64,000 nucleotides of DNA from Thecamonas trahens ATCC 50062 (Eukaryota; Protista; Apusomonadida), in contig NW_013657647.1 of NCBI RefSeq assembly GCF_000142905.1, positions 316,598 to 380,597 on the forward strand, in the 5' to 3' direction. Position numbers and translations under genes: made by a program. The notes under the pieces are model-generated. The model searched no databases and had not been told where the DNA came from. It saw only the letters and a list, made by a program, of their open reading frames with translations. Positions 50,392 through 60,404 of the stretch are shown here, piece after piece; position 1 is the stretch's first letter, and each line of letters starts with the position of its first letter.

Positions 50392-51639
50392 ATGCTCTTG
50401 CACCTTAGCTCTGCGGCGGGGACGACCATGGCTGTATTCATGATCATTGCAGCACTCGGAGTGGTGAGTGCAACCACAAGCATGGGTCAAGCCCAACTCG
50501 TACCGCCGCCAGATGATCTGCTCGCTGCTGTTGCCCATGACCAACCTCTGTGGAGCCGTGAGCGTGTCCACTCTTTTGCGGAAATTATGATTAATCGCAA
50601 AGTCCTCGATGTCGAGTACGCGGAGGAGGCTGATATGCCAAAGATGGAGTTCGAGAGTGTCAACTGTCCACGGTTGACTCAGCGCTCACCGCCGGATCAT
50701 GTTGGCGTGGTCAAGCCGGTGGACATTGCTGCTATGGGCGCCATCGGCGACTCGTTCACCACGGCCTCCAACGCGCTCTCGACCTCGTGGTTCGATCTCA
50801 ACTGGTTTCCCGGCGTGGCATGGTCGATGGGTGCCGACGAGGGCGTTATTTCGGCATACAACATCATGAAGGCGATCGGAAGGCCGGATGTGGTGGGCGG
50901 CTCGGTCGGTGTCGGCGACGTCGGCGCCAACATGCACTGCAACCAGGCCGTGGCCGGCTCGCACGTCCAGGCCCTCATCAACCAGACCTACGCCCTCATC
51001 GACGCCTTCAAGGCCGAGCTCAATGAGACTGGATACGCGACCGAGTGGAAGACAGTCTCTGTCTACATCGGCGGCAACAACCTATGCGATTACTGCCGCA
51101 AGCCCGGCCCCAACACGCCCGAGGTCTACGAGCTCAATCTGCGCGCCGCCTTTGACGTCCTCGCCACCATTCCACGGGTCATTGTCTCGGTTGTACCCAT
51201 TGTGGACGGCACACAGATGTGCCCGCTGATGGGTCCGTTCTGTCACATCGCGCTCGACAAGCTCTGCCCGTGCTTCATCTCGTCCAACGCCACCGAGCGG
51301 GCGATTACTCTGCAAGGTGTCGCTGCCTACAACTCGGCCATGCAGGTTGTGGTCAACGATTACAACGCCAAGACCGGATCGGACTGGGCCGCCGTCTTCC
51401 AGCCGTTTTTTGCCGGCCTCCGCGTACCGGAGGGTAAGGCCGGCAAGGCCTGGTTCGACCGCGCAGACTGCTTCCACCCGTCGGCTGTCCCCGGCCACAA
51501 GATGATCGGCATCGGCATGTGGAACAACATGATCTCGCCTCTTGGCGCAAAGGAGACTCTCACGCCTGAGACCACGCTCAAGTGCCCCACCGACGCCGAC
51601 TACATCTACACTGCCAAAACGCCCGCGACCACGGTGTAG
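50392..51639 (+). CDS. Secreted phospholipase B1-like SGNH/GDSL lipase, paralogue A
   Basis: IAAMGAIGDSFT, NQAVAGS, WK.V..YIGGNNLC, DCFHPS. Confidence 0.9.
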   Translation: MLLHLSSAAGTTMAVFMIIAALGVVSATTSMGQAQLVPPPDDLLAAVAHDQPLWSRERVHSFAEIMINRKVLDVEYAEEADMPKMEFESVNCPRLTQRSPPDHVGVVKPVDIAAMGAIGDSFTTASNALSTSWFDLNWFPGVAWSMGADEGVISAYNIMKAIGRPDVVGGSVGVGDVGANMHCNQAVAGSHVQALINQTYALIDAFKAELNETGYATEWKTVSVYIGGNNLCDYCRKPGPNTPEVYELNLRAAFDVLATIPRVIVSVVPIVDGTQMCPLMGPFCHIALDKLCPCFISSNATERAITLQGVAAYNSAMQVVVNDYNAKTGSDWAAVFQPFFAGLRVPEGKAGKAWFDRADCFHPSAVPGHKMIGIGMWNNMISPLGAKETLTPETTLKCPTDADYIYTAKTPATTV

Positions 51640-53648: not shown

Positions 53649-55037
53649 ATGACATGGTCACATGCTGTGAAAGTAGCCATAGTCATGGCATGTGTTATGG
53701 CTATGGTACTGGGTACGGATGTGGCTGTGGTGGGCGAGAGGCGTGCATTGGCCGAGGGCCAGGCGGAGGAGGTGGCGGTGGCATGGGAGGCGCTGCCCGA
53801 ACCGCCGCACGAGTTTGTGACCATGATTGCCAACGAGTACCGATACTTGGAGCCGACAGAGGTGATGTATGTGGCCAAAGCCTTCTTCAATCGCAAGCAT
53901 CTGGATCCTGATTATGATGATGAACTGATCGAGGCTGTGGCTGTGGAGAGGAGCCATCGCCGTGGTGACGGTGATCGGTCGGCTCGCTCCGGTCGGGAAG
54001 CTGCGATGAGGCTTGGTGGTGGGGTGGAGATGAGCTGCCAGCGGCTGACGCAGCGGTCACCGCCGGATCATGTGGGGCTGGTCAAGCCGGTGGACATTGC
54101 AGCCATGGGTGCGATTGGTGACTCGTTTACGGTGGCGTCCAACGCGCTGTCGACGACGTGGCTCAACATGAACTGGTTCCCAGGCCTGTCGTGGTCGATG
54201 GGTGCAGACGAGGGCACCATGTCGGCATACAACATGATGCGAGCCACGGGTCGGCCGGATGTGGTGGGCGGGTCTGTTGGCGTCGGCGACGTCGGCGCCA
54301 ACATGCACTGCAATCAGGCGATTGCCGGCTCGACGGTGCAAGACATGCCGAACCAGACGTACGCGCTGATCGAGGCGTTCAAGACGCAGCTCAACGAGAC
54401 CGGGTATGCAACCGAGTGGAAGACAGTGACTGTGTTTATTGGCGGCAACAACCTGTGTCAGTACTGCAAGAAGCCCGGCCCCAACTCGCCGCAGGTGTAC
54501 GAGGCCGGCCTCCGGGCGGCATTCGATGTTCTCGCCACCATTCCGCGAGTCATTGTCTCGATTGTGCCGATTTTTGACGGGACGCAGCTTCGCGAGTTCA
54601 TGGGTCCCTTCTGCCACCTCGTACTCGACAAGCTCTGCCCGTGCTTCATCTCGTCCGACGATGGGGTGCTGGAGCAGTCGCGACACAACATCGCGACGTT
54701 CAACGGCATCATGGAGGACATTGTGGCCGAGTACAACAACCAGACCGGCTCGGACTGGGCGGCAGTCTTCCAGTCATACCTCGCGGGTCTCCGCGTTCCG
54801 CACGGCGAGGCTGGCAAGGAGTGGCTCTCCCGCGCCGATTGCTTCCACCCGTCTGGCCACCGCGGGCAGCCGATGATCGGCATGGGCATGTGGAACTCGA
54901 TGATTTCACCCGTCGGCGCCAAGCCGACGCTCACCCCTGAGACAACTCTCAAGTGCCCTACCGATGACGACTACCTCTTCACGCCCAAGACATTGCCGTC
55001 CAAGATCGTGACGTCCAAAGGCAAGGCTGCGCCGTGA
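53649..55037 (+). CDS. Secreted phospholipase B1-like SGNH/GDSL lipase, paralogue B
   Basis: Same motifs as paralogue A; long shared peptides (RLTQRSPPDHVG, GVGDVGANMHCNQA). Confidence 0.9.
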   Translation: MTWSHAVKVAIVMACVMAMVLGTDVAVVGERRALAEGQAEEVAVAWEALPEPPHEFVTMIANEYRYLEPTEVMYVAKAFFNRKHLDPDYDDELIEAVAVERSHRRGDGDRSARSGREAAMRLGGGVEMSCQRLTQRSPPDHVGLVKPVDIAAMGAIGDSFTVASNALSTTWLNMNWFPGLSWSMGADEGTMSAYNMMRATGRPDVVGGSVGVGDVGANMHCNQAIAGSTVQDMPNQTYALIEAFKTQLNETGYATEWKTVTVFIGGNNLCQYCKKPGPNSPQVYEAGLRAAFDVLATIPRVIVSIVPIFDGTQLREFMGPFCHLVLDKLCPCFISSDDGVLEQSRHNIATFNGIMEDIVAEYNNQTGSDWAAVFQSYLAGLRVPHGEAGKEWLSRADCFHPSGHRGQPMIGMGMWNSMISPVGAKPTLTPETTLKCPTDDDYLFTPKTLPSKIVTSKGKAAP

Positions 55038-55262
55038 AGGATGGATGACCAGCCAGCCGACCGACCACACGGCAACGATGCGACTCCACACATGGAGCGA
55101 TTGAACGCACCTTTGCAGGACCTTGAGAGCACCTCCCCCGTGTGACCAGAGAGGGACCAAGGTTGCGATGCGGGGAGGGGGGCGATGATCAGCCGGTTGG
55201 CGCAGGTTGGTGGCTTGGTTGACTTACGCCAGTTTGGGCACTTGTCGCGAGGAGGAGGAGAG

Positions 55263-56418
55263 ATGGGTCCAGGGATGAAGGGATGGAGTATGGGAGACAG
55301 AGTAGCAGTGGCAGTGGTGGTGATGGTGGGCATGGCGGTGGGCATGGTGGGTGGACATGAACGGTTGCTGTGGCCGCCGTCGCGTACGTGGTGTGCGGGA
55401 GGGAGGGGATGTGAGGCTGGTCTGCAGACAGTGCCCGGCCCATGGCCGCTGTCGGTATCGTGGAACACTGCCTGCGGGAATTGGGCATCGACATCGGATG
55501 ATGTGGTTGTGGCGTGACGTGCCGGAAGGGGATCGGCTGTGGCGGGTCGGGGGGAGGGGGGAGGGGATCGGCTGCCGTGGAGGTTCTGTTCTGCACACAC
55601 TCACTCTGCCTCTTCCCCCCCCCTCCTTGCGCACATGCACAGGATCGGGTACGTACCACTTTGGCGGTGGCTGCGATCCGTGGAAGATTGGCGATCCCAA
55701 CCTAGAGTTTGTCCGCGCAGATAGTGTTCTGGAGATCAGGTTTACGGCCGAGTTTGCAGACAGCTCGGGGCCCGGCCCAGGTAGCTACGCCCCGACGGTG
55801 TGGATCTCGCTGGTGGCGGAGGCCGACGAGGCGGACATGGGCCTGTTTACCCATGTTATTGCCTCGTTCGAGCCGGAAGTCGTGACAAAGACGTTCAACG
55901 CGTCGCTCGGAGCTGACGTTGCATCTGTACGTGTGAGCCTTCCGCCGTCGGCGCCGCTCGGCCGGTACGTCTTGCACTGGCGGCTCGACGGGTGGTCCAA
56001 CTGCGCCGACATCGCGATCGTGGCCGGGACCGTCCCGGGCCATGTCGCGGTGCCGCCTGCGGCACCTGCGCAGCACACCGGGCCGCTCATTGTGGTTGCC
56101 GTCGCCGCAGGGTTTATCATCGGTATTATTGTCCTCGTTACCGTCGGCTACAGCCGCACACAGCAGCAAGCTGCGCGCGCACCCGGCTGGTACTTGGACG
56201 AGCCCGAGTCGGACGAGCTGCCGACCGTTGTCGCACTCACGCGTCCGCTCTCGGCCTCGGACATCCTCGCTCCGCTTGTAGGACGTGGCATCCTGCCGGA
56301 GCGCGTCGAGTCTATGCTCTTTCCGCCCTCGCCGTCGGATGGCGGGTGGAGCGCGACATCATCGACGCGCTCGCGGACCAGGTCATCGCTGTCGTCATCA
56401 GCAACTTCGTGGTCGTGA
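55263..56418 (+). CDS. Membrane-anchored LPMO-like (N-terminal His) protein; exons 55263-55383 and 55643-56418, 298 aa
   Basis: Signal peptide then HERLLWPPSR (completed by phase-1 splice gtacgt...cacag); YVLHW...WSNCADIAI; single TM. Confidence 0.68.
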
Positions 56419-56427
56419 CATGGCGGC

Positions 56428-57314
56428 TCACGGCAACAGCGGATCGACTGCTGAGACTCGGTTGATCGACTCGGTGCCGGCGGCGCCATACGAAGCCCCC
56501 GTGTAGGCAAACGCCGTGGACGGCGCGCGCTCCTTGAAGAACCACTTGCGAAGAGTAAAGAAGGCAATGCCCGAGACGATTGCCCAAGCTGCGTCGGTGA
56601 TGTACACGATGACAAACGCAGCGTCGCCATACTTTGAGGCGAAGAGACCGCCGTCTTGGGCCGGGAAGACGATGGCGCAGTGAACGGTGGAGACGATGAG
56701 GCCAAAGAAGATTGACCGGATGAGATAGTGCGGCCAGGTGAACGGGATGAGGTGGACGGCGCCCCACATGCCGCCCCATACCATCTTGTTGTCTGTTGAC
56801 GCCGCCAAGCCGATCAACCGTCCACCATGTCAGCCAAGTTGAGCATGTCCGTCGCGCACACCACGCCGATCAGCCGTGCCAGTATCAACCGCATTCACCA
56901 TGTCGGCCAAGTTGAGCATGTCCGTCGCGCACACCACGCCGATCATCCGCGCCAGGATCAACCGCATTCACCATGTCGGCCAAGTTGAGCATGTCCGTCG
57001 CGCACACCACGCCGATCAGCCGAACCATGTCCACGACGTCGACCACGTCCATCACGCCCACGACGTACACCCGGCCATCACCTGCCCCATAAGTCGCCCT
57101 CCTCCTCCCCCCCCCCCACCCCCTCCTCCCCCCCTCTCGACAACATACACAACCAGGCAACCTTGTACGGATGCAGAGGATTCAGAGTCACGCCCATGAC
57201 CTTGTTGAGGCCGACCAACTCAAAGGCAGCTTGGACAAGAGCATTGGCAAGGCCACCGAGGGTACCTGAGCCATAGGCAAGAAAGACGAGAAAGACAAAG
57301 ACACGTAGTTCCAT
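56428..57314 (-). CDS. Small ~4-TM protein of bacterial-like type; exons 57314-57149 and 56792-56428, 176 aa
   Basis: GTLGGLANAL...AWLYNKMVWGGMWG; phase-1 splice gtatgt...aacag. Confidence 0.75.
56809..57022. repeat. Intronic tandem repeat, ~3 x 73 bp
   Basis: CACCATGTCRGCCAAGTTGAGCATGTCCGTCGCGCACACCACGCCGATCA at 56823, 56896, 56969. Confidence 0.95.
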
Positions 57315-58368: not shown

Positions 58369-59721
58369 TCACTGGTCCAGCTCCTGCGCCACGTCAAACA
58401 GATTGAGAAGAAACCCGAGGGCAAAGTCCTCGTGCCGCCGATAGGACGGCGGAAAGGCGCGCGATGAGGCCTCTAGCGCCGCAGTCAGCGCGGCGACATC
58501 GGCGGCTGGGTTGAGCATGGGCAGAAACTCGGTGGCGTGCGAGGTCTCCCACTCGTCGCGGATCCGATCCGCGGCTTCTGCGCTCGAGCTGAGGTACATG
58601 ATCTTGAGGATGGGGACAGGGACGACGTCGAGGGCGACAGCCGCCACGTCCGGCACCGGCAGCTCCACATTGGTGGCCAGCGCCGCATCGGCGGCAAAGA
58701 GCCACAAGAGCAGGAACCGTCCGTCGCCGTCGTCGGCGATAAAGCGGAAGACGCCGTGAGCAAGTGACGCGTCGCGCATGTCTGCCGCAGCTGCCAGCGC
58801 CACAGAGTGGGCGGCGTAGTAGCAGGACTCGGCGTGAGGATGCATGTGCTCCTCGTCGCGGAAGAGGCAGATGGCGTGCTTCCGCAGCGAGTACGAGCCG
58901 TCGCTCGACTGCGTGCCCAGCTGCCCGCCGCATGCCGTACACATCACGCCCAGCGGAGCCCCGCCCCGATTCGCCGCAACCTGCGTCACCACGCCCGGCA
59001 TCAGCGTCGATGCGTGGACAACCACATAGTGCGGCGCGTCGAGGAGCAGGCCAGCCTCGCCGGCAAGCTCGCCCTTGGGCAGATGCGGGAAGGCGAGGCC
59101 GTCGTCGTCGTGGCAGATCCAATAGTCAATCATCTCGTGCCAGAACTGCGACGGCAGCGGCGCAACCTTGTGGAACAGCTGCTCGCCGTCAGGGAGCTCT
59201 GGTGTCAGCTCGGCGCCACACGCGCGGCACGCCAAGATCCCGGCCTCCTCCACCCGCGGAGCCGCTGTCAGCAGCATCATCTCCGTCTCCACACCGTTTG
59301 CCGCATCCTCAGCCGTCCGTGTCGGCGGCGCCGGGTCGTCCAGCGGCACCCGGATCACCACCGTGTCCTCGTCCTCGTTGAGCTTGGCCGAGGCGAGATG
59401 CGGCGAGACGAGGCAGTCAAGGTCGATCACCACCAGCTCGTTCCCGACGCCGTCCTCCTCGCCAACCACATCGTCGGCTCTAGCACCACGGACCGCCTTA
59501 CCACAGCCTTGCACCCCGCTTTCATCGCTACTTCCCCCGCCGCCATCGTCGCTACAGCCAGTACTTCCCGCCGCCGTCGTCGCCAATCGTAGCTCGACGC
59601 GCGAGTCCTCCACCCGCATCCGCAACGACCGGACAGCCTCGGCGGGCGTGGTCCATACCAGCACCTGAACGGTGGAGATATGGCTCAGCTTCTCCACTAC
59701 ATACCACACACTCGTCTCCAT
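58369..59721 (-). CDS. UBE3D: HECT_2-family protein (UBE3D/Ipa1-like), ~450 aa
   Basis: CRACG, PLPSQFWHEMIDYWICH, CTACGGQLG, ILKIMY; start chosen at METSVWYVVE. Confidence 0.85.
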   Translation of the reverse strand: METSVWYVVEKLSHISTVQVLVWTTPAEAVRSLRMRVEDSRVELRLATTAAGSTGCSDDGGGGSSDESGVQGCGKAVRGARADDVVGEEDGVGNELVVIDLDCLVSPHLASAKLNEDEDTVVIRVPLDDPAPPTRTAEDAANGVETEMMLLTAAPRVEEAGILACRACGAELTPELPDGEQLFHKVAPLPSQFWHEMIDYWICHDDDGLAFPHLPKGELAGEAGLLLDAPHYVVVHASTLMPGVVTQVAANRGGAPLGVMCTACGGQLGTQSSDGSYSLRKHAICLFRDEEHMHPHAESCYYAAHSVALAAAADMRDASLAHGVFRFIADDGDGRFLLLWLFAADAALATNVELPVPDVAAVALDVVPVPILKIMYLSSSAEAADRIRDEWETSHATEFLPMLNPAADVAALTAALEASSRAFPPSYRRHEDFALGFLLNLFDVAQELDQ

Positions 59722-60404
59722 TCTGCCGAGTGAGGTCTGCTCAACTCTCTCTCTGAGCTCAACCATACCTCCCCACAGGGTCCTCAACGACTCGAGTTGA
59801 GTCGATCCCTCAAGACGGGCGGGCAGCTCCTCCGCCACAATGCGCCCGTGGCTAGGGAGAGAGGACAAAGTGCGATGGGAGATAAAGTTGGATGGAGAAG
59901 TTGGAGATATGGTGGAGAATGGGCAGAGTGAGGAGAAGGGGAACGGATCAGAGGTTATGGCGGGTCATGGGTGGGGCTAGCGTCGGTGGGGTGGGCCGGT
60001 CAAGGGGAGGCAGGTGAGACAATGGACGAGAACAGCCTCTGCAGCCGCTCCACACACGTATCGCGAGCTGATTTCATGCTTACACTCATTGTGCCACTTG
60101 CCCCTAGGTCTGCACGGAACCGTGAGCAGGTTGTAAGGCTTGCGTCATTCGTATCGCCGTACTTGAGTTGCTGCATGGCGAGCCCGTGTTGCACTGCGGC
60201 TCATTGATCGCGGTGTCATAGGCAACATTAGTCGACGTTACGGCGTTTTGCGCCGCACATTTTGTGATCTTTGTCTGTATGGATGCAGAACGGGCCAGAT
60301 GGCTGCAGGAGGGCATGTTGTGGTGTACATGCTCTCCCATGTAAACCTTGGCGGAGTTGGGGGACTGTCAACACTCGTCTCGCAGGCAATCTGACGATCG
60401 GAGG

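What the first reader, a model, noticed from the sequence alone, without database searches (positions are those of the whole stretch)
55263..56418. Splice-hidden, membrane-tethered LPMO-like protein with a rewired copper site
Seen: joining 55383 to 55643 gives a signal peptide followed immediately by HERLLWPPSR, later YVLHW...WSNCADIAI, a Pro/Ala linker, one TM helix and a Ser-rich tail. No single ORF in the track shows this. Known: lytic polysaccharide monooxygenases (AA10/AA15/AA16) and X325 proteins begin with His1 in HxxLxxPxxR; LPMOs end the domain with VLQW...F/YxxCxD. Inference: the expected second brace His appears replaced (EFADSSG), the second-sphere Gln is His and the axial Tyr/Phe is Trp. 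This may be a new surface copper-protein subfamily (copper capture or sensing, or attack on prey walls) rather than a classical LPMO.
Basis: partly seen in the sequence, partly recalled or inferred. Interest (0 to 1): 0.8.

Follow-up and report, generated by a model that had tools for sequence, protein, structure and literature searches.

The report
Divergent LPMO-like membrane protein, one histidine short
A two-exon gene of the flagellate Thecamonas trahens encodes a membrane-anchored surface protein whose two ends carry the signature of copper-binding LPMO-like proteins. The second copper-binding histidine is missing, so it is probably a non-enzymatic offshoot of that family, but the family link rests on weak evidence.

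Summary
Joining 55383 to 55643 (GTACGT...CAG, phase 1) keeps the frame. The public record AMSG_06583 (Thecamonas trahens, "uncharacterized, partial") already uses this junction, so the model is not hidden. The product reads: hydrophobic leader, His, ~136-aa domain, Pro/Ala linker, one TM helix, 88-aa tail.

The LPMO reading is partly supported.
- **Against:** no Pfam, NCBIfam or PDB sequence match, no relative among 1.8 billion representatives, and no paralogue in the genome.
- **For:** a global profile alignment to the bacterial SCE4755/BIM1-like family beats all 300 shuffles (z 6.6). The protein-atlas neighbours are LPMO clusters. The genome holds at least three clearer LPMO-like genes.
- **Caveat:** the alignment signal sits almost wholly in the N-terminal decapeptide and the C-terminal NCADIAI. 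The core adds little.

The family's brace His aligns with Asp49, or within six residues of it.

My best reading is a non-catalytic LPMO-fold ectodomain. It may bind Cu(II) through His1, a carboxylate and Trp, like the bacterial YcnI monohistidine brace. A weak SEA-like resemblance in the core is a rival. The scan has noted other LPMO-like genes elsewhere in this genome.

The parts
55263..55383 (+). Exon 1: start region, hydrophobic leader (probable signal peptide, 55263-55355) and the first nine and one third codons of the mature protein. The start may instead be the ATG at 55185, 55275, 55290 or 55323.
   Evidence: in-frame stop at 55143-55145. P0001 covers it from 55323.
55356..55358 (+). 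Codon of His1, predicted to be the first residue of the mature protein. V-G-G occupies positions -3 to -1.
   Evidence: It aligns with the invariant H1 of the SCE4755/BIM1-like family.
55384..55642 (+). Spliceosomal intron: 259 nt, phase 1, GTACGT...polypyrimidine...CAG.
   Evidence: The junction is used by public protein P0001. Reading through gives a stop at 55515-55517.
55643..56418 (+). Exon 2: the rest of the ectodomain, linker, TM helix, cytoplasmic tail and TGA stop.
55672..55674 (+). Cys20, probable disulfide partner of Cys130. It corresponds to the family's invariant C21.
   Evidence: These are the only two Cys residues in the ectodomain.
55759..55761 (+). Asp49, followed by SSGPGPG. 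It sits at, or within six residues of, the position of the family's invariant second brace His (ETIxH).
   Evidence: Extension of the alignment. There is no His between mature residues 16 and 79.
55966..56019 (+). C-terminal signature YVLHWRLDGWSNCADIAI. His121 takes the place of the invariant Gln. Trp127 (55993-55995) takes the place of the axial Tyr or Phe. Cys130-Ala-Asp is conserved.
   Evidence: (TdAA15A ends CVLQW...EYRNCADIAI, with Tyr184 three residues before the Cys).
56020..56085 (+). Pro/Ala-rich linker between the domain and the membrane.
   Evidence: Low pLDDT in both models.
56086..56151 (+). Single transmembrane helix of 22 hydrophobic residues, followed by SRTQQQAAR on the cytoplasmic side.
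   Evidence: A helix at residues 167-197 in the single-sequence model.
56152..56415 (+). 88-aa cytoplasmic tail with an acidic patch (DEPESDE) and a Ser/Thr/Arg-rich end.

Best explanation
**What it is.** This is a real, single-copy, two-exon gene of Thecamonas trahens for a type I membrane protein. From the N-terminus the product reads:
- a cleavable leader;
- a ~136-aa extracellular domain that starts with His;
- a Pro/Ala stalk;
- one TM helix;
- an 88-aa cytoplasmic tail.

**Family (inferred).** The ectodomain is most likely a very divergent member of the LPMO-like beta-sandwich superfamily. Its nearest groups are AA15, the bacterial SCE4755/BIM1-like family and fungal X325. It keeps the N-terminal His-x-x-Leu-x-x-Pro-x-x-Arg segment, one Cys pair and the C-terminal Cys-Ala-Asp-Ile strand. 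It has lost three things: the second histidine of the copper brace (Asp49 or nothing in its place), the axial Tyr (now Trp127) and the family's CxxC pair.

**Mechanism (inferred, not shown).** Without the bis-histidine brace it should not be an oxidative polysaccharide-cleaving enzyme. The most likely mechanism is that the amino terminus and imidazole of His1, with a carboxylate (Asp49) and Trp127 stacked over the site, hold one Cu(II) at the cell surface. This ligand set matches the monohistidine brace solved in bacterial YcnI, which is also tethered by a C-terminal TM helix. The protein would then capture or hand over copper, for example to the Ctr transporters encoded elsewhere in the genome. 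Alternatively it could report copper through its tail.

**Shown versus inferred.** Shown here: gene structure, topology features and motif positions. Inferred: homology, fold, metal binding and function.
For: **Gene model.**

**Identity.**

**Family consensus.** The bacterial family reads HxxLxxPxPR ... ETIxH ... CxxCTLQLIQVM ... YYQCADIVL. H1, P7, R10, C21, H49, Y127, C130 and D132 are invariant in 120 of 120 sequences.

**Profile alignments.**
- Local hhalign of P0001 against that family aligns His12-Ala56 with columns 1-47, P = 0.033.
- Global hhalign is collinear over the whole domain: score 18.8, P = 0.0013.
- None of 300 shuffles reaches that score, z = 6.6.
- The reversed sequence scores 6.2, and 87 natural beta-rich decoys reach at most 10.3.
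- With the termini kept and the core shuffled, only 6 of 150 reach the real score.

**Chance of the motif pair.** The two terminal motifs at the right places have a chance of about 5e-9 per secreted protein.

**Link to solved LPMOs.** The family profile hits TdAA15A (E = 9e-8), AA13 and AA10 structures. AA15 ends in the identical NCADIAI.

**Protein atlas.**
- The nearest named clusters by features are BIM1-like, SCE4755 and LPMO_10 (0.84, 186 of 256 features).
- The Atlas's own model has TM 0.68 to an LPMO cluster.
- The same families return when only residues 22-138 are queried.

**Structure models.**
- AlphaFold with the family alignment gives ectodomain pLDDT of about 55-92.
- Its strand positions match 8 of the 9 strands predicted with no alignment.
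- Its top 15 VIA-align matches are all LPMOs: 5msz Z 10.8, 4oy7 Z 9.8, 6ibh Z 9.6, each starting at His12.

**Context.**
- The genome has clearer LPMO-like genes, two of them TM-anchored.
- 89 of 109 bacterial members carry a C-terminal hydrophobic anchor.
- YcnI binds Cu(II) at about 2 nM through the amine and N-delta of His27, Glu50 and Trp137 (PMC8424229).
- Three Ctr genes are present in the genome.
Against: **No sequence-level match.**
- No Pfam, NCBIfam or PDB sequence match at E <= 10.
- The family profile finds three other loci in this genome but not this one.
- There is no relative among 1.84 billion representatives or 5.8 billion clusters. Conservation of His1, Asp49 and Trp127 therefore cannot be checked.

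**The alignment signal is terminal.**
- The score falls to 2.4 without the first 12 residues, 4.5 without the last 9, and 4.6 for the core alone. A genuine paralogue scores 53.5 overall and 32.4 for its core.
- Matches to conserved columns in the core are no better than for shuffled cores.
- There is no pairwise similarity to the paralogue L169 beyond NCAD[IV]xI.

**Structure support is weak or circular.**
- The alignment-free AlphaFold model is poor (pLDDT 48.6). It matches only generic jelly-roll and sandwich domains.
- The LPMO-like model is circular, because its alignment is the LPMO-like family. Even so, Foldseek ranks Ig domains first.
- No coordinates are returned, so the proximity of His1, Asp49 and Trp127 is not shown.

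**Open points.**
- The exact residue facing the brace-His position varies by up to six residues between alignments.
- Cleavage before the His is not computed, and the start codon is ambiguous.
- The core resembles an amphioxus SEA domain.
- No Ctr gene lies nearby.
Confidence: 0.5

Rival explanations
1. A dead LPMO-fold ectodomain. The fold and the N-terminal segment are inherited from an LPMO-like ancestor, but the metal site is gone. The protein would then be an adhesion, recognition or spacer module on the cell surface, with function carried by its surface and its cytoplasmic tail.
For: The second brace His, the axial Tyr, both invariant Gln residues and the CxxC pair are all replaced. The core has drifted beyond profile detection. 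An LPMO-like protein without the histidine brace is already known, LsAA9B (cited in PMC10354095).
Against: His is kept at exactly the predicted first position together with Pro7 and Arg10. A carboxylate and a Trp stand where a YcnI-type site would need them. LsAA9B lacks the brace motif altogether, whereas this protein keeps His1.
Confidence: 0.25
2. Not an LPMO relative at all. It would be an orphan juxtamembrane beta-rich or SEA-like domain of a small mucin-like type I membrane protein, and the two terminal motifs would resemble LPMOs by chance.
For: The only non-self hit below 1e-4 in 1.84 billion proteins is a Branchiostoma protein with three SEA domains, E = 2e-5. BLAST gives 29% identity over residues 44-112, and FEPEVVTKTF faces the FRPGSVVATV cleavage strand. 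Local hhalign scores 31.5, P = 5.8e-5, z = 10. SEA domains typically sit next to a TM helix (general knowledge). No LPMO HMM matches. The alignment-free model is not LPMO-specific.
Against: The SEA hit was chosen as the best of 1.8e9 sequences. Its E-value is inflated by three near-identical repeats. The general Pfam SEA model gives nothing. Both AlphaFold runs predict an all-beta ectodomain and the Atlas model's structural neighbours are all beta-sandwich domains; an SEA domain (alpha/beta, by general knowledge) would need helices. The alignment covers only the first 63 SEA positions. The terminal motif pair has a chance of about 5e-9. Atlas neighbours are LPMO families even without the termini.
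Confidence: 0.2
3. A still-catalytic LPMO that completes its brace with a different histidine (His15, His80 or His121) and oxidises a polysaccharide of prey or of the cell's own coat.
For: Three other His residues lie in the ectodomain. His121 replaces an invariant Gln on the strand that leads to the active-site face. Thecamonas trahens is, by general knowledge, a bacterivore.
Against: No solved LPMO family matched by the family profile (AA15, AA13, AA10, AA11 or AA16) is known to take the second His from these positions, and the brace His is invariant in 120 of 120 family members. The loops that form a substrate-binding face are shortened; for example, the long loop between CVLQW and NCADIAI in AA15 is reduced to DG. 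No geometry could be examined.
Confidence: 0.05

Closest known systems
AA15 LPMOs (TdAA15A, PDB 5MSZ)
   Same: Signal peptide followed by an N-terminal His. The C-terminal strand NCADIAI is identical. A CVLQW-like strand (YVLHW) is present. It is the best structural match of the family-guided model: Z 10.8, rmsd 2.6 A, 120 residues, 22% identity. AA15 is reported from protists as well as animals (PMC5823890).
   Different: His91 has no counterpart and Tyr184 is Trp. Only 2 Cys residues are present, where AA15 has ten conserved cysteines forming five disulfide bonds. The domain is about 136 aa against about 195. There is no sequence-level hit. The protein is TM-anchored.
Bacterial SCE4755 family polysaccharide monooxygenase-like proteins (Pfam BIM1-like_dom PF20238 / LPMO_10)
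   Same: HxxLxxPxxR start; L125 begins HARLVWPTPRS against HERLLWPPSRS here. Domain length is 129-157 aa. There is a Cys near position 20 and a CAD[IV]x[IVL] end. The domain is followed by a low-complexity linker and a C-terminal membrane anchor. This is the only family tested here that gave a significant global profile score.
   Different: Nine of the family's 20 invariant residues are changed, including H49, C101, C104, Q107, Q110 and Y127. The core is not detectably similar. The protein is eukaryotic, spliced, and carries a cytoplasmic tail.
X325 / Bim1 (LaX325, PDB 6IBH; Cryptococcus Bim1)
   Same: Both are non-catalytic LPMO-like copper proteins tethered to the cell surface and working in copper uptake with Ctr1. 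An Asp on a Gly-rich loop joins the copper sphere (PMC7529816; PMC7924993). The model matches 6ibh at Z 9.6 over 120 of 150 residues. Here Asp49 is followed by SSGPGPG.
   Different: X325 keeps both brace histidines and a GPI anchor. This protein lacks the second His and has a TM helix plus a tail. PF20238 does not match.
YcnI / DUF1775 monohistidine brace (Bacillus subtilis)
   Same: Same architecture: signal peptide, N-terminal His, extracellular beta domain, C-terminal TM helix. The proposed ligand set is the same: His1 amine and imidazole, one carboxylate, and a Trp over the metal (PMC8424229).
   Different: YcnI has a cupredoxin fold and shows no sequence relation; no DUF1775 hit was found. 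The similarity is functional analogy only, and is inferred.
LsAA9B, an AA9 member lacking the histidine brace
   Same: A precedent for LPMO-fold proteins that have lost the canonical copper site.
   Different: LsAA9B lacks the conserved brace motif altogether and is a secreted fungal protein. This protein keeps His1 and is membrane-anchored.

Membership tests
LPMO superfamily (AA10/AA15 type, Pfam LPMO_10 PF03067) | Profile match above the curated threshold | tested here: not met
   No hit at E <= 10 for exon 2 or P0001. PF03067 finds nothing in the whole genome. PDB phmmer finds nothing.
LPMO superfamily (AA10/AA15 type, Pfam LPMO_10 PF03067) | His as first residue of the mature protein | tested here: inconclusive
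   His follows an 18-residue hydrophobic stretch, with V-G-G at -3 to -1. No signal-peptide predictor is available, the start codon is ambiguous, and there are no protein data.
LPMO superfamily (AA10/AA15 type, Pfam LPMO_10 PF03067) | Second histidine completing the brace | tested here: not met
   There is no His between mature residues 16 and 79. Asp49, or a residue within six of it, faces the invariant His.
LPMO superfamily (AA10/AA15 type, Pfam LPMO_10 PF03067) | Axial Tyr or Phe three residues before the C-terminal Cys | tested here: not met
   The sequence reads WSNC, against YRNC in TdAA15A (Tyr184) and YYQC in the bacterial family.
LPMO superfamily (AA10/AA15 type, Pfam LPMO_10 PF03067) | LPMO-type beta-sandwich fold | tested here: inconclusive
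   The single-sequence AF2 model is all-beta but generic, with pLDDT 48.6. The family-guided AF2 model matches LPMOs at Z 8.3-10.8, but this is circular. The Atlas model has TM 0.64-0.68 to LPMO clusters at pLDDT 0.53.
LPMO superfamily (AA10/AA15 type, Pfam LPMO_10 PF03067) | Copper-dependent oxidative cleavage of a polysaccharide | not testable with these tools
   This needs biochemistry.
X325 / BIM1-like (PF20238) | Profile match above threshold | tested here: not met
   No hit. For comparison, the clearer paralogue L169 reaches only 19.6 bits against a cut-off of 27.
X325 / BIM1-like (PF20238) | Bis-His brace plus an Asp ligand on a Gly-rich loop | tested here: not met
   The second His is absent. 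Asp49 followed by SSGPGPG exists, but its equivalence to the X325 Asp is not shown.
X325 / BIM1-like (PF20238) | GPI anchor | tested here: not met
   The hydrophobic segment is followed by an 88-aa hydrophilic tail, so it is a TM helix and not a GPI signal.
Bacterial SCE4755 PMO-like family | Collinear match to the family profile, and the family's invariant residues | tested here: inconclusive
   Global hhalign P = 0.0013, z = 6.6, but the score depends on the termini. About 11 of 20 invariant residues are kept in the MAFFT alignment, which is no better than shuffled cores.
YcnI / DUF1775 | DUF1775 profile match and cupredoxin fold | tested here: not met
   No Pfam hit. The resemblance is limited to architecture and the inferred ligand set.
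SEA domain (PF01390) | Profile match, and the alpha/beta SEA fold | tested here: not met
   No Pfam SEA hit. The ectodomain is all-beta in both AF2 models and its Atlas structural neighbours are beta-sandwich domains. Only a post hoc similarity to one amphioxus SEA protein was found.

The most novel reading that the evidence does not exclude
An LPMO-fold ectodomain has been rebuilt into a YcnI-type monohistidine brace: His1 amine and imidazole, the Asp49 carboxylate, and Trp127 over the metal. It would be anchored by a TM helix with a signalling or trafficking tail. If so, this eukaryotic surface copper receptor or chaperone arose by rewiring the LPMO site, which would be convergent with a bacterial cupredoxin-fold protein.
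Probability: 0.2. Interest if true: 0.65.

Novelty: new variant of a known kind. Interest (0 to 1): 0.4.

Why it matters
Histidine-brace proteins are known as oxidative enzymes (LPMOs, pMMO) and as copper carriers (CopC, X325/Bim1, YcnI).

If this reading is confirmed, the protein would show that the LPMO scaffold can lose one brace histidine and still keep a plausible copper site of the YcnI type. It would also extend membrane-tethered LPMO-like copper proteins to apusomonads, which by general knowledge branch close to animals and fungi.

Together with the clearer paralogues found here, it would suggest that a wall-less bacterivore uses a small set of LPMO-like surface proteins. That would bear on the original, non-digestive roles of this fold.

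If it is not confirmed, this is simply a lineage-specific orphan membrane protein.

Tried and rejected
**Searches that found nothing.**
- Pfam and NCBIfam scans of exon 2, the exon-1 read-through and P0001.
- PDB sequence search.
- Word search of 5.8 billion clusters: self only.
- Full HMMER search of 1.84 billion representatives: self plus three marginal hits to repeat-rich or biased proteins.
- Paralogue search in the genome: none.
- PF20238, PF03067 and PF01390 against the genome: none.

**Structure attempts that gave no support.**
- Foldseek and VIA-align on the single-sequence AF2 model gave only generic CBM, jelly-roll and SID1 ectodomain matches at background Z.
- Foldseek on the family-guided model put Ig domains first.

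**Alignment tests that failed or were weak.**
- Local HMMER with an 11-sequence family model scored -0.2 bits; 54 of 2000 shuffles did as well.
- A pairwise test against the paralogue L169 found nothing beyond NCAD[IV]xI.
- Counting matches to conserved columns showed the core is no better than shuffled cores.

**Other.**
- Trying to broaden the SEA profile returned only Branchiostoma orthologs at 81-84% identity.
- No Ctr transporter is linked to the locus.
- The neighbours are two GDSL lipases, an unassigned small membrane protein and a HECT_2 protein. They give no functional clue.

**On the spliced model.** Exon pieces were searched by reference. The spliced protein was used only as the public record P0001 returned.
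Full report
**Source and gene model**

The window comes from Thecamonas trahens ATCC 50062. The exon-2 translation is 100% identical to the NCBI protein 'uncharacterized protein AMSG_06583, partial' (P0001, 278 aa). The assembly is 28.7 Mb in 131 contigs, and the window lies on contig C33.

- Exon 1 (to 55383) and exon 2 (from 55643) lie in different frames of the ORF track.
- They join in phase 1 across a 259-nt intron. The intron starts GTACGT and ends with a polypyrimidine run and CAG.
- P0001 reads ...HERLLWPPSR|SGTYHFGGG..., which is the same junction (compare).
- GC3 is 0.75 in exon 2 and 0.77 in the neighbouring lipase gene. The intron is flat in all frames.
- Without splicing, the exon-1 frame stops at 55515-55517.

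Exons were searched by reference, and the spliced form was used only as the public record P0001.

The 5' end is open. P0001 starts at 55323 and is flagged partial. In-frame ATGs lie at 55185, 55263, 55275 and 55290, and an in-frame stop lies at 55143. The upstream gene on the same strand ends at 55037, so a further upstream exon is unlikely.

**Anatomy**

From the N-terminus:
- Hydrophobic leader (VAVAVVVMVGMAVGMVGG).
- His1 at 55356.
- An ectodomain of about 136 aa with only two Cys residues (Cys20, Cys130) and one NAS sequon.
- A Pro/Ala linker at 56020-56085.
- A 22-residue TM helix at 56086-56151.
- Basic residues, then an 88-aa tail with an acidic patch and a Ser/Thr/Arg-rich end.

Cleavage before the His fits the -3/-1 rule (V, G), but it was not computed.

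**Sequence searches**

Nothing matches at the sequence level.
- No Pfam, NCBIfam or PDB sequence hit at E <= 10.
- Only self in the word search of 5.8 billion clusters.
- Only self plus three marginal hits in a full HMMER pass over 1.84 billion representatives.
- No paralogue in the genome.

By sequence, the protein is an orphan.

**Testing the LPMO hypothesis directly**

The protein atlas gave a lead. The nearest named clusters by features are BIM1-like_dom, 'SCE4755 family polysaccharide monooxygenase-like' and LPMO_10, with a score of 0.84 and 186 of 256 shared features. The Atlas's own low-confidence model has TM 0.68 to an LPMO cluster.

To test this I fetched the bacterial family.
- Eleven PF20238 loci came from Myxococcota genomes.
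- 120 further members came from the cluster library.

The family consensus is HxxLxxPxPR ... PCG ... VxVxFxETIxHPGxFR ... VTLPxxxCxxCTLQLIQVM ... YYQCADIVL. H1, P7, R10, C21, E45, H49, C101, C104, Q110, Y127, C130 and D132 are invariant in 120 of 120 sequences.

The family profile hits TdAA15A (5MSZ, E = 9e-8), AA13 and AA10 structures. AA15 ends CVLQW...EYRNCADIAI, and Tyr184 is the axial residue.

P0001 against the family:

| Test | Result |
|---|---|
| Local hhalign | His12-Ala56 on columns 1-47, P = 0.033 |
| Global hhalign | collinear over 1-135, score 18.8, P = 0.0013 |
| 300 shuffles | mean 2.9, sd 2.4, max 12.5; none reaches 18.8; z = 6.6 |
| Reversed sequence | 6.2 |
| 87 natural beta-rich decoys | max 10.3 |
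| First 12 residues removed | 2.4 |
| Last 9 residues removed | 4.5 |
| Core alone | 4.6 |
| Termini kept, core shuffled | 6 of 150 reach the real score |
| Genuine paralogue L169 | 53.5 overall, 32.4 core only |
| Matches to conserved columns | 12 of 32; no better than shuffled cores |

The signal therefore depends on the two ends. Statistically, the case rests on three things:
- the two terminal motifs, at the right places and the right distance apart, with a chance of about 5e-9 per secreted protein;
- the Cys pair;
- the domain length of 136 aa, against 129-157 aa in the family.

Querying the Atlas with residues 22-138 only, without either motif, still returns LPMO_10, BIM1-like and SCE4755 clusters. 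The best structural neighbour is again an LPMO_10 cluster at TM 0.64. This counts as soft support only.

**Structure prediction**

- Without an alignment, AlphaFold gives a poor all-beta model (pLDDT 48.6). Its matches are generic jelly-roll or sandwich domains at background level.
- With the family alignment A2, the ectodomain rises to pLDDT 55-92.
- The strands in that model fall where 8 of the 9 alignment-free strands fell.
- An exhaustive VIA-align search puts 15 LPMOs first: 5msz Z 10.8, 4oy7 Z 9.8 and LaX325 6ibh Z 9.6. All start at His12.

This second result is circular, because the alignment is the LPMO-like family. It shows compatibility, not proof. Foldseek on the same model still ranks Ig domains first. 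No coordinates are returned, so the distances between His1, Asp49 and Trp127 could not be measured.

**The copper site**

Under every alignment, no His stands at the brace position. There is none between mature residues 16 and 79.
- Extending the alignment puts Asp49 on the family's His49 (LEVSFEETINH against LEIRFTAEFAD).
- MAFFT puts the His one residue later.
- Global hhalign puts it six residues later.

Trp127 aligns with the invariant axial Tyr, and His121 with the invariant Gln107. The CxxC pair is absent.

A solved precedent exists for the resulting ligand set. Bacillus subtilis YcnI binds Cu(II) at about 2 nM through the amine and N-delta of its N-terminal His, with Glu50 and Trp137 stacked on the metal. 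It too is a signal-peptide, ectodomain, C-terminal-TM protein (PMC8424229). X325/Bim1 adds an Asp on a Gly-rich loop to a full brace and serves copper uptake with Ctr1 (PMC7529816; PMC7924993). LsAA9B shows that LPMO folds can lose the brace.

**Context in the genome**

The family profile finds three clearer LPMO-like genes in the same genome.
- One on C34 has a signal peptide, HICALHPVQR, ALNH and FYNCADVLI. It shows sub-threshold BIM1-like, AA9 and ependymin hits.
- A tandem pair on C41 is TM-anchored.

Earlier first-stage notes of this scan flagged several such genes in this genome. Even the clearer paralogue stays under Pfam's cut-off, so Pfam silence on this gene is weak evidence against the reading.

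Surface tethering is typical of the wider family:
- 89 of 109 bacterial members carry a C-terminal hydrophobic anchor.
- X325 is GPI-anchored.

Three Ctr transporters exist on other contigs. The neighbours here are two GDSL lipases, an unassigned small membrane protein and a HECT_2 protein, and they give no functional clue.

**The SEA rival**

The best non-self hit in the large search is a Branchiostoma protein with three SEA domains.
- BLAST gives 29% identity over residues 44-112.
- Local hhalign scores 31.5, z = 10.

SEA domains typically sit next to TM helices, so this rival deserves weight. Four points count against it:
- The hit was selected from 1.8e9 sequences, and its three near-identical repeats inflate the E-value.
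- The general SEA model does not match.
- Both AlphaFold models are all-beta in the ectodomain, and the Atlas model's structural neighbours are beta-sandwich domains.
- SEA would not explain the terminal motifs.

**Verdict**

My estimates:
- About 0.5 that the best explanation as stated holds: a divergent LPMO-like ectodomain that lacks the second brace histidine and is therefore not a classical LPMO.
- About 0.2 that it binds copper through a YcnI-like monohistidine brace.
- The rest is split between a dead LPMO fold and an unrelated orphan or SEA-like domain.

If real, it is a new variant of a known kind.

Noticed in passing
G000 contig C34:360996-361370 (locus L169:1360-2493, + strand): A clearer LPMO-like gene in the same genome. 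It has a signal peptide, HICALHPVQR, the brace His in ALNH, and FYNCADVLI. A C-terminal region follows with a sub-threshold ependymin hit. Profile A1 gives E = 1.4e-7. Pfam BIM1-like scores 19.6 bits and AA9 16.8 bits, both under their cut-offs.
   Followed up: partly
G000 contig C41:82743-83174 and 84386-84817 (loci L170, L171): A tandem pair of near-identical LPMO-like genes: ...SWHETIN, an apparent intron, ...ATLQLLNPM...FSVYHSCASISI. Each is followed by a Pro-rich linker, a TM helix and a short tail. Profile A1 gives E = 2.9e-5 for each.
   Followed up: partly
window 50392-51639 and 53649-55037 (+): Two tandem GDSL-type lipase or phospholipase B-like genes lie directly upstream. Pfam Lipase_GDSL gives E = 1.4e-10 for each.
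   Followed up: no
window 56428-56817 (-): A convergent 129-aa hydrophobic ORF begins 10 nt after the stop of this gene. It has no Pfam family.
   Followed up: no
window 58369-59868 (-): An ORF with a HECT_2 (E2-binding HECT-like) domain, E = 3.6e-28.
   Followed up: no
Bacterial loci L124-L134 and proteins P0005-P0124: In the SCE4755/BIM1-like family, most members end in an acidic low-complexity linker and a MYXO-CTERM-like hydrophobic anchor followed by an Arg run (89 of 109). Many carry both PF03067 and PF20238 annotations, so the two Pfam models overlap on this family.
   Followed up: partly
G000 contigs C13:193439-193945, C35:124552-124839, C20:357383-357721: Three Ctr-family copper transporter genes in T. 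trahens, with a fourth weak match on C3. None lies near the LPMO-like gene.
   Followed up: no
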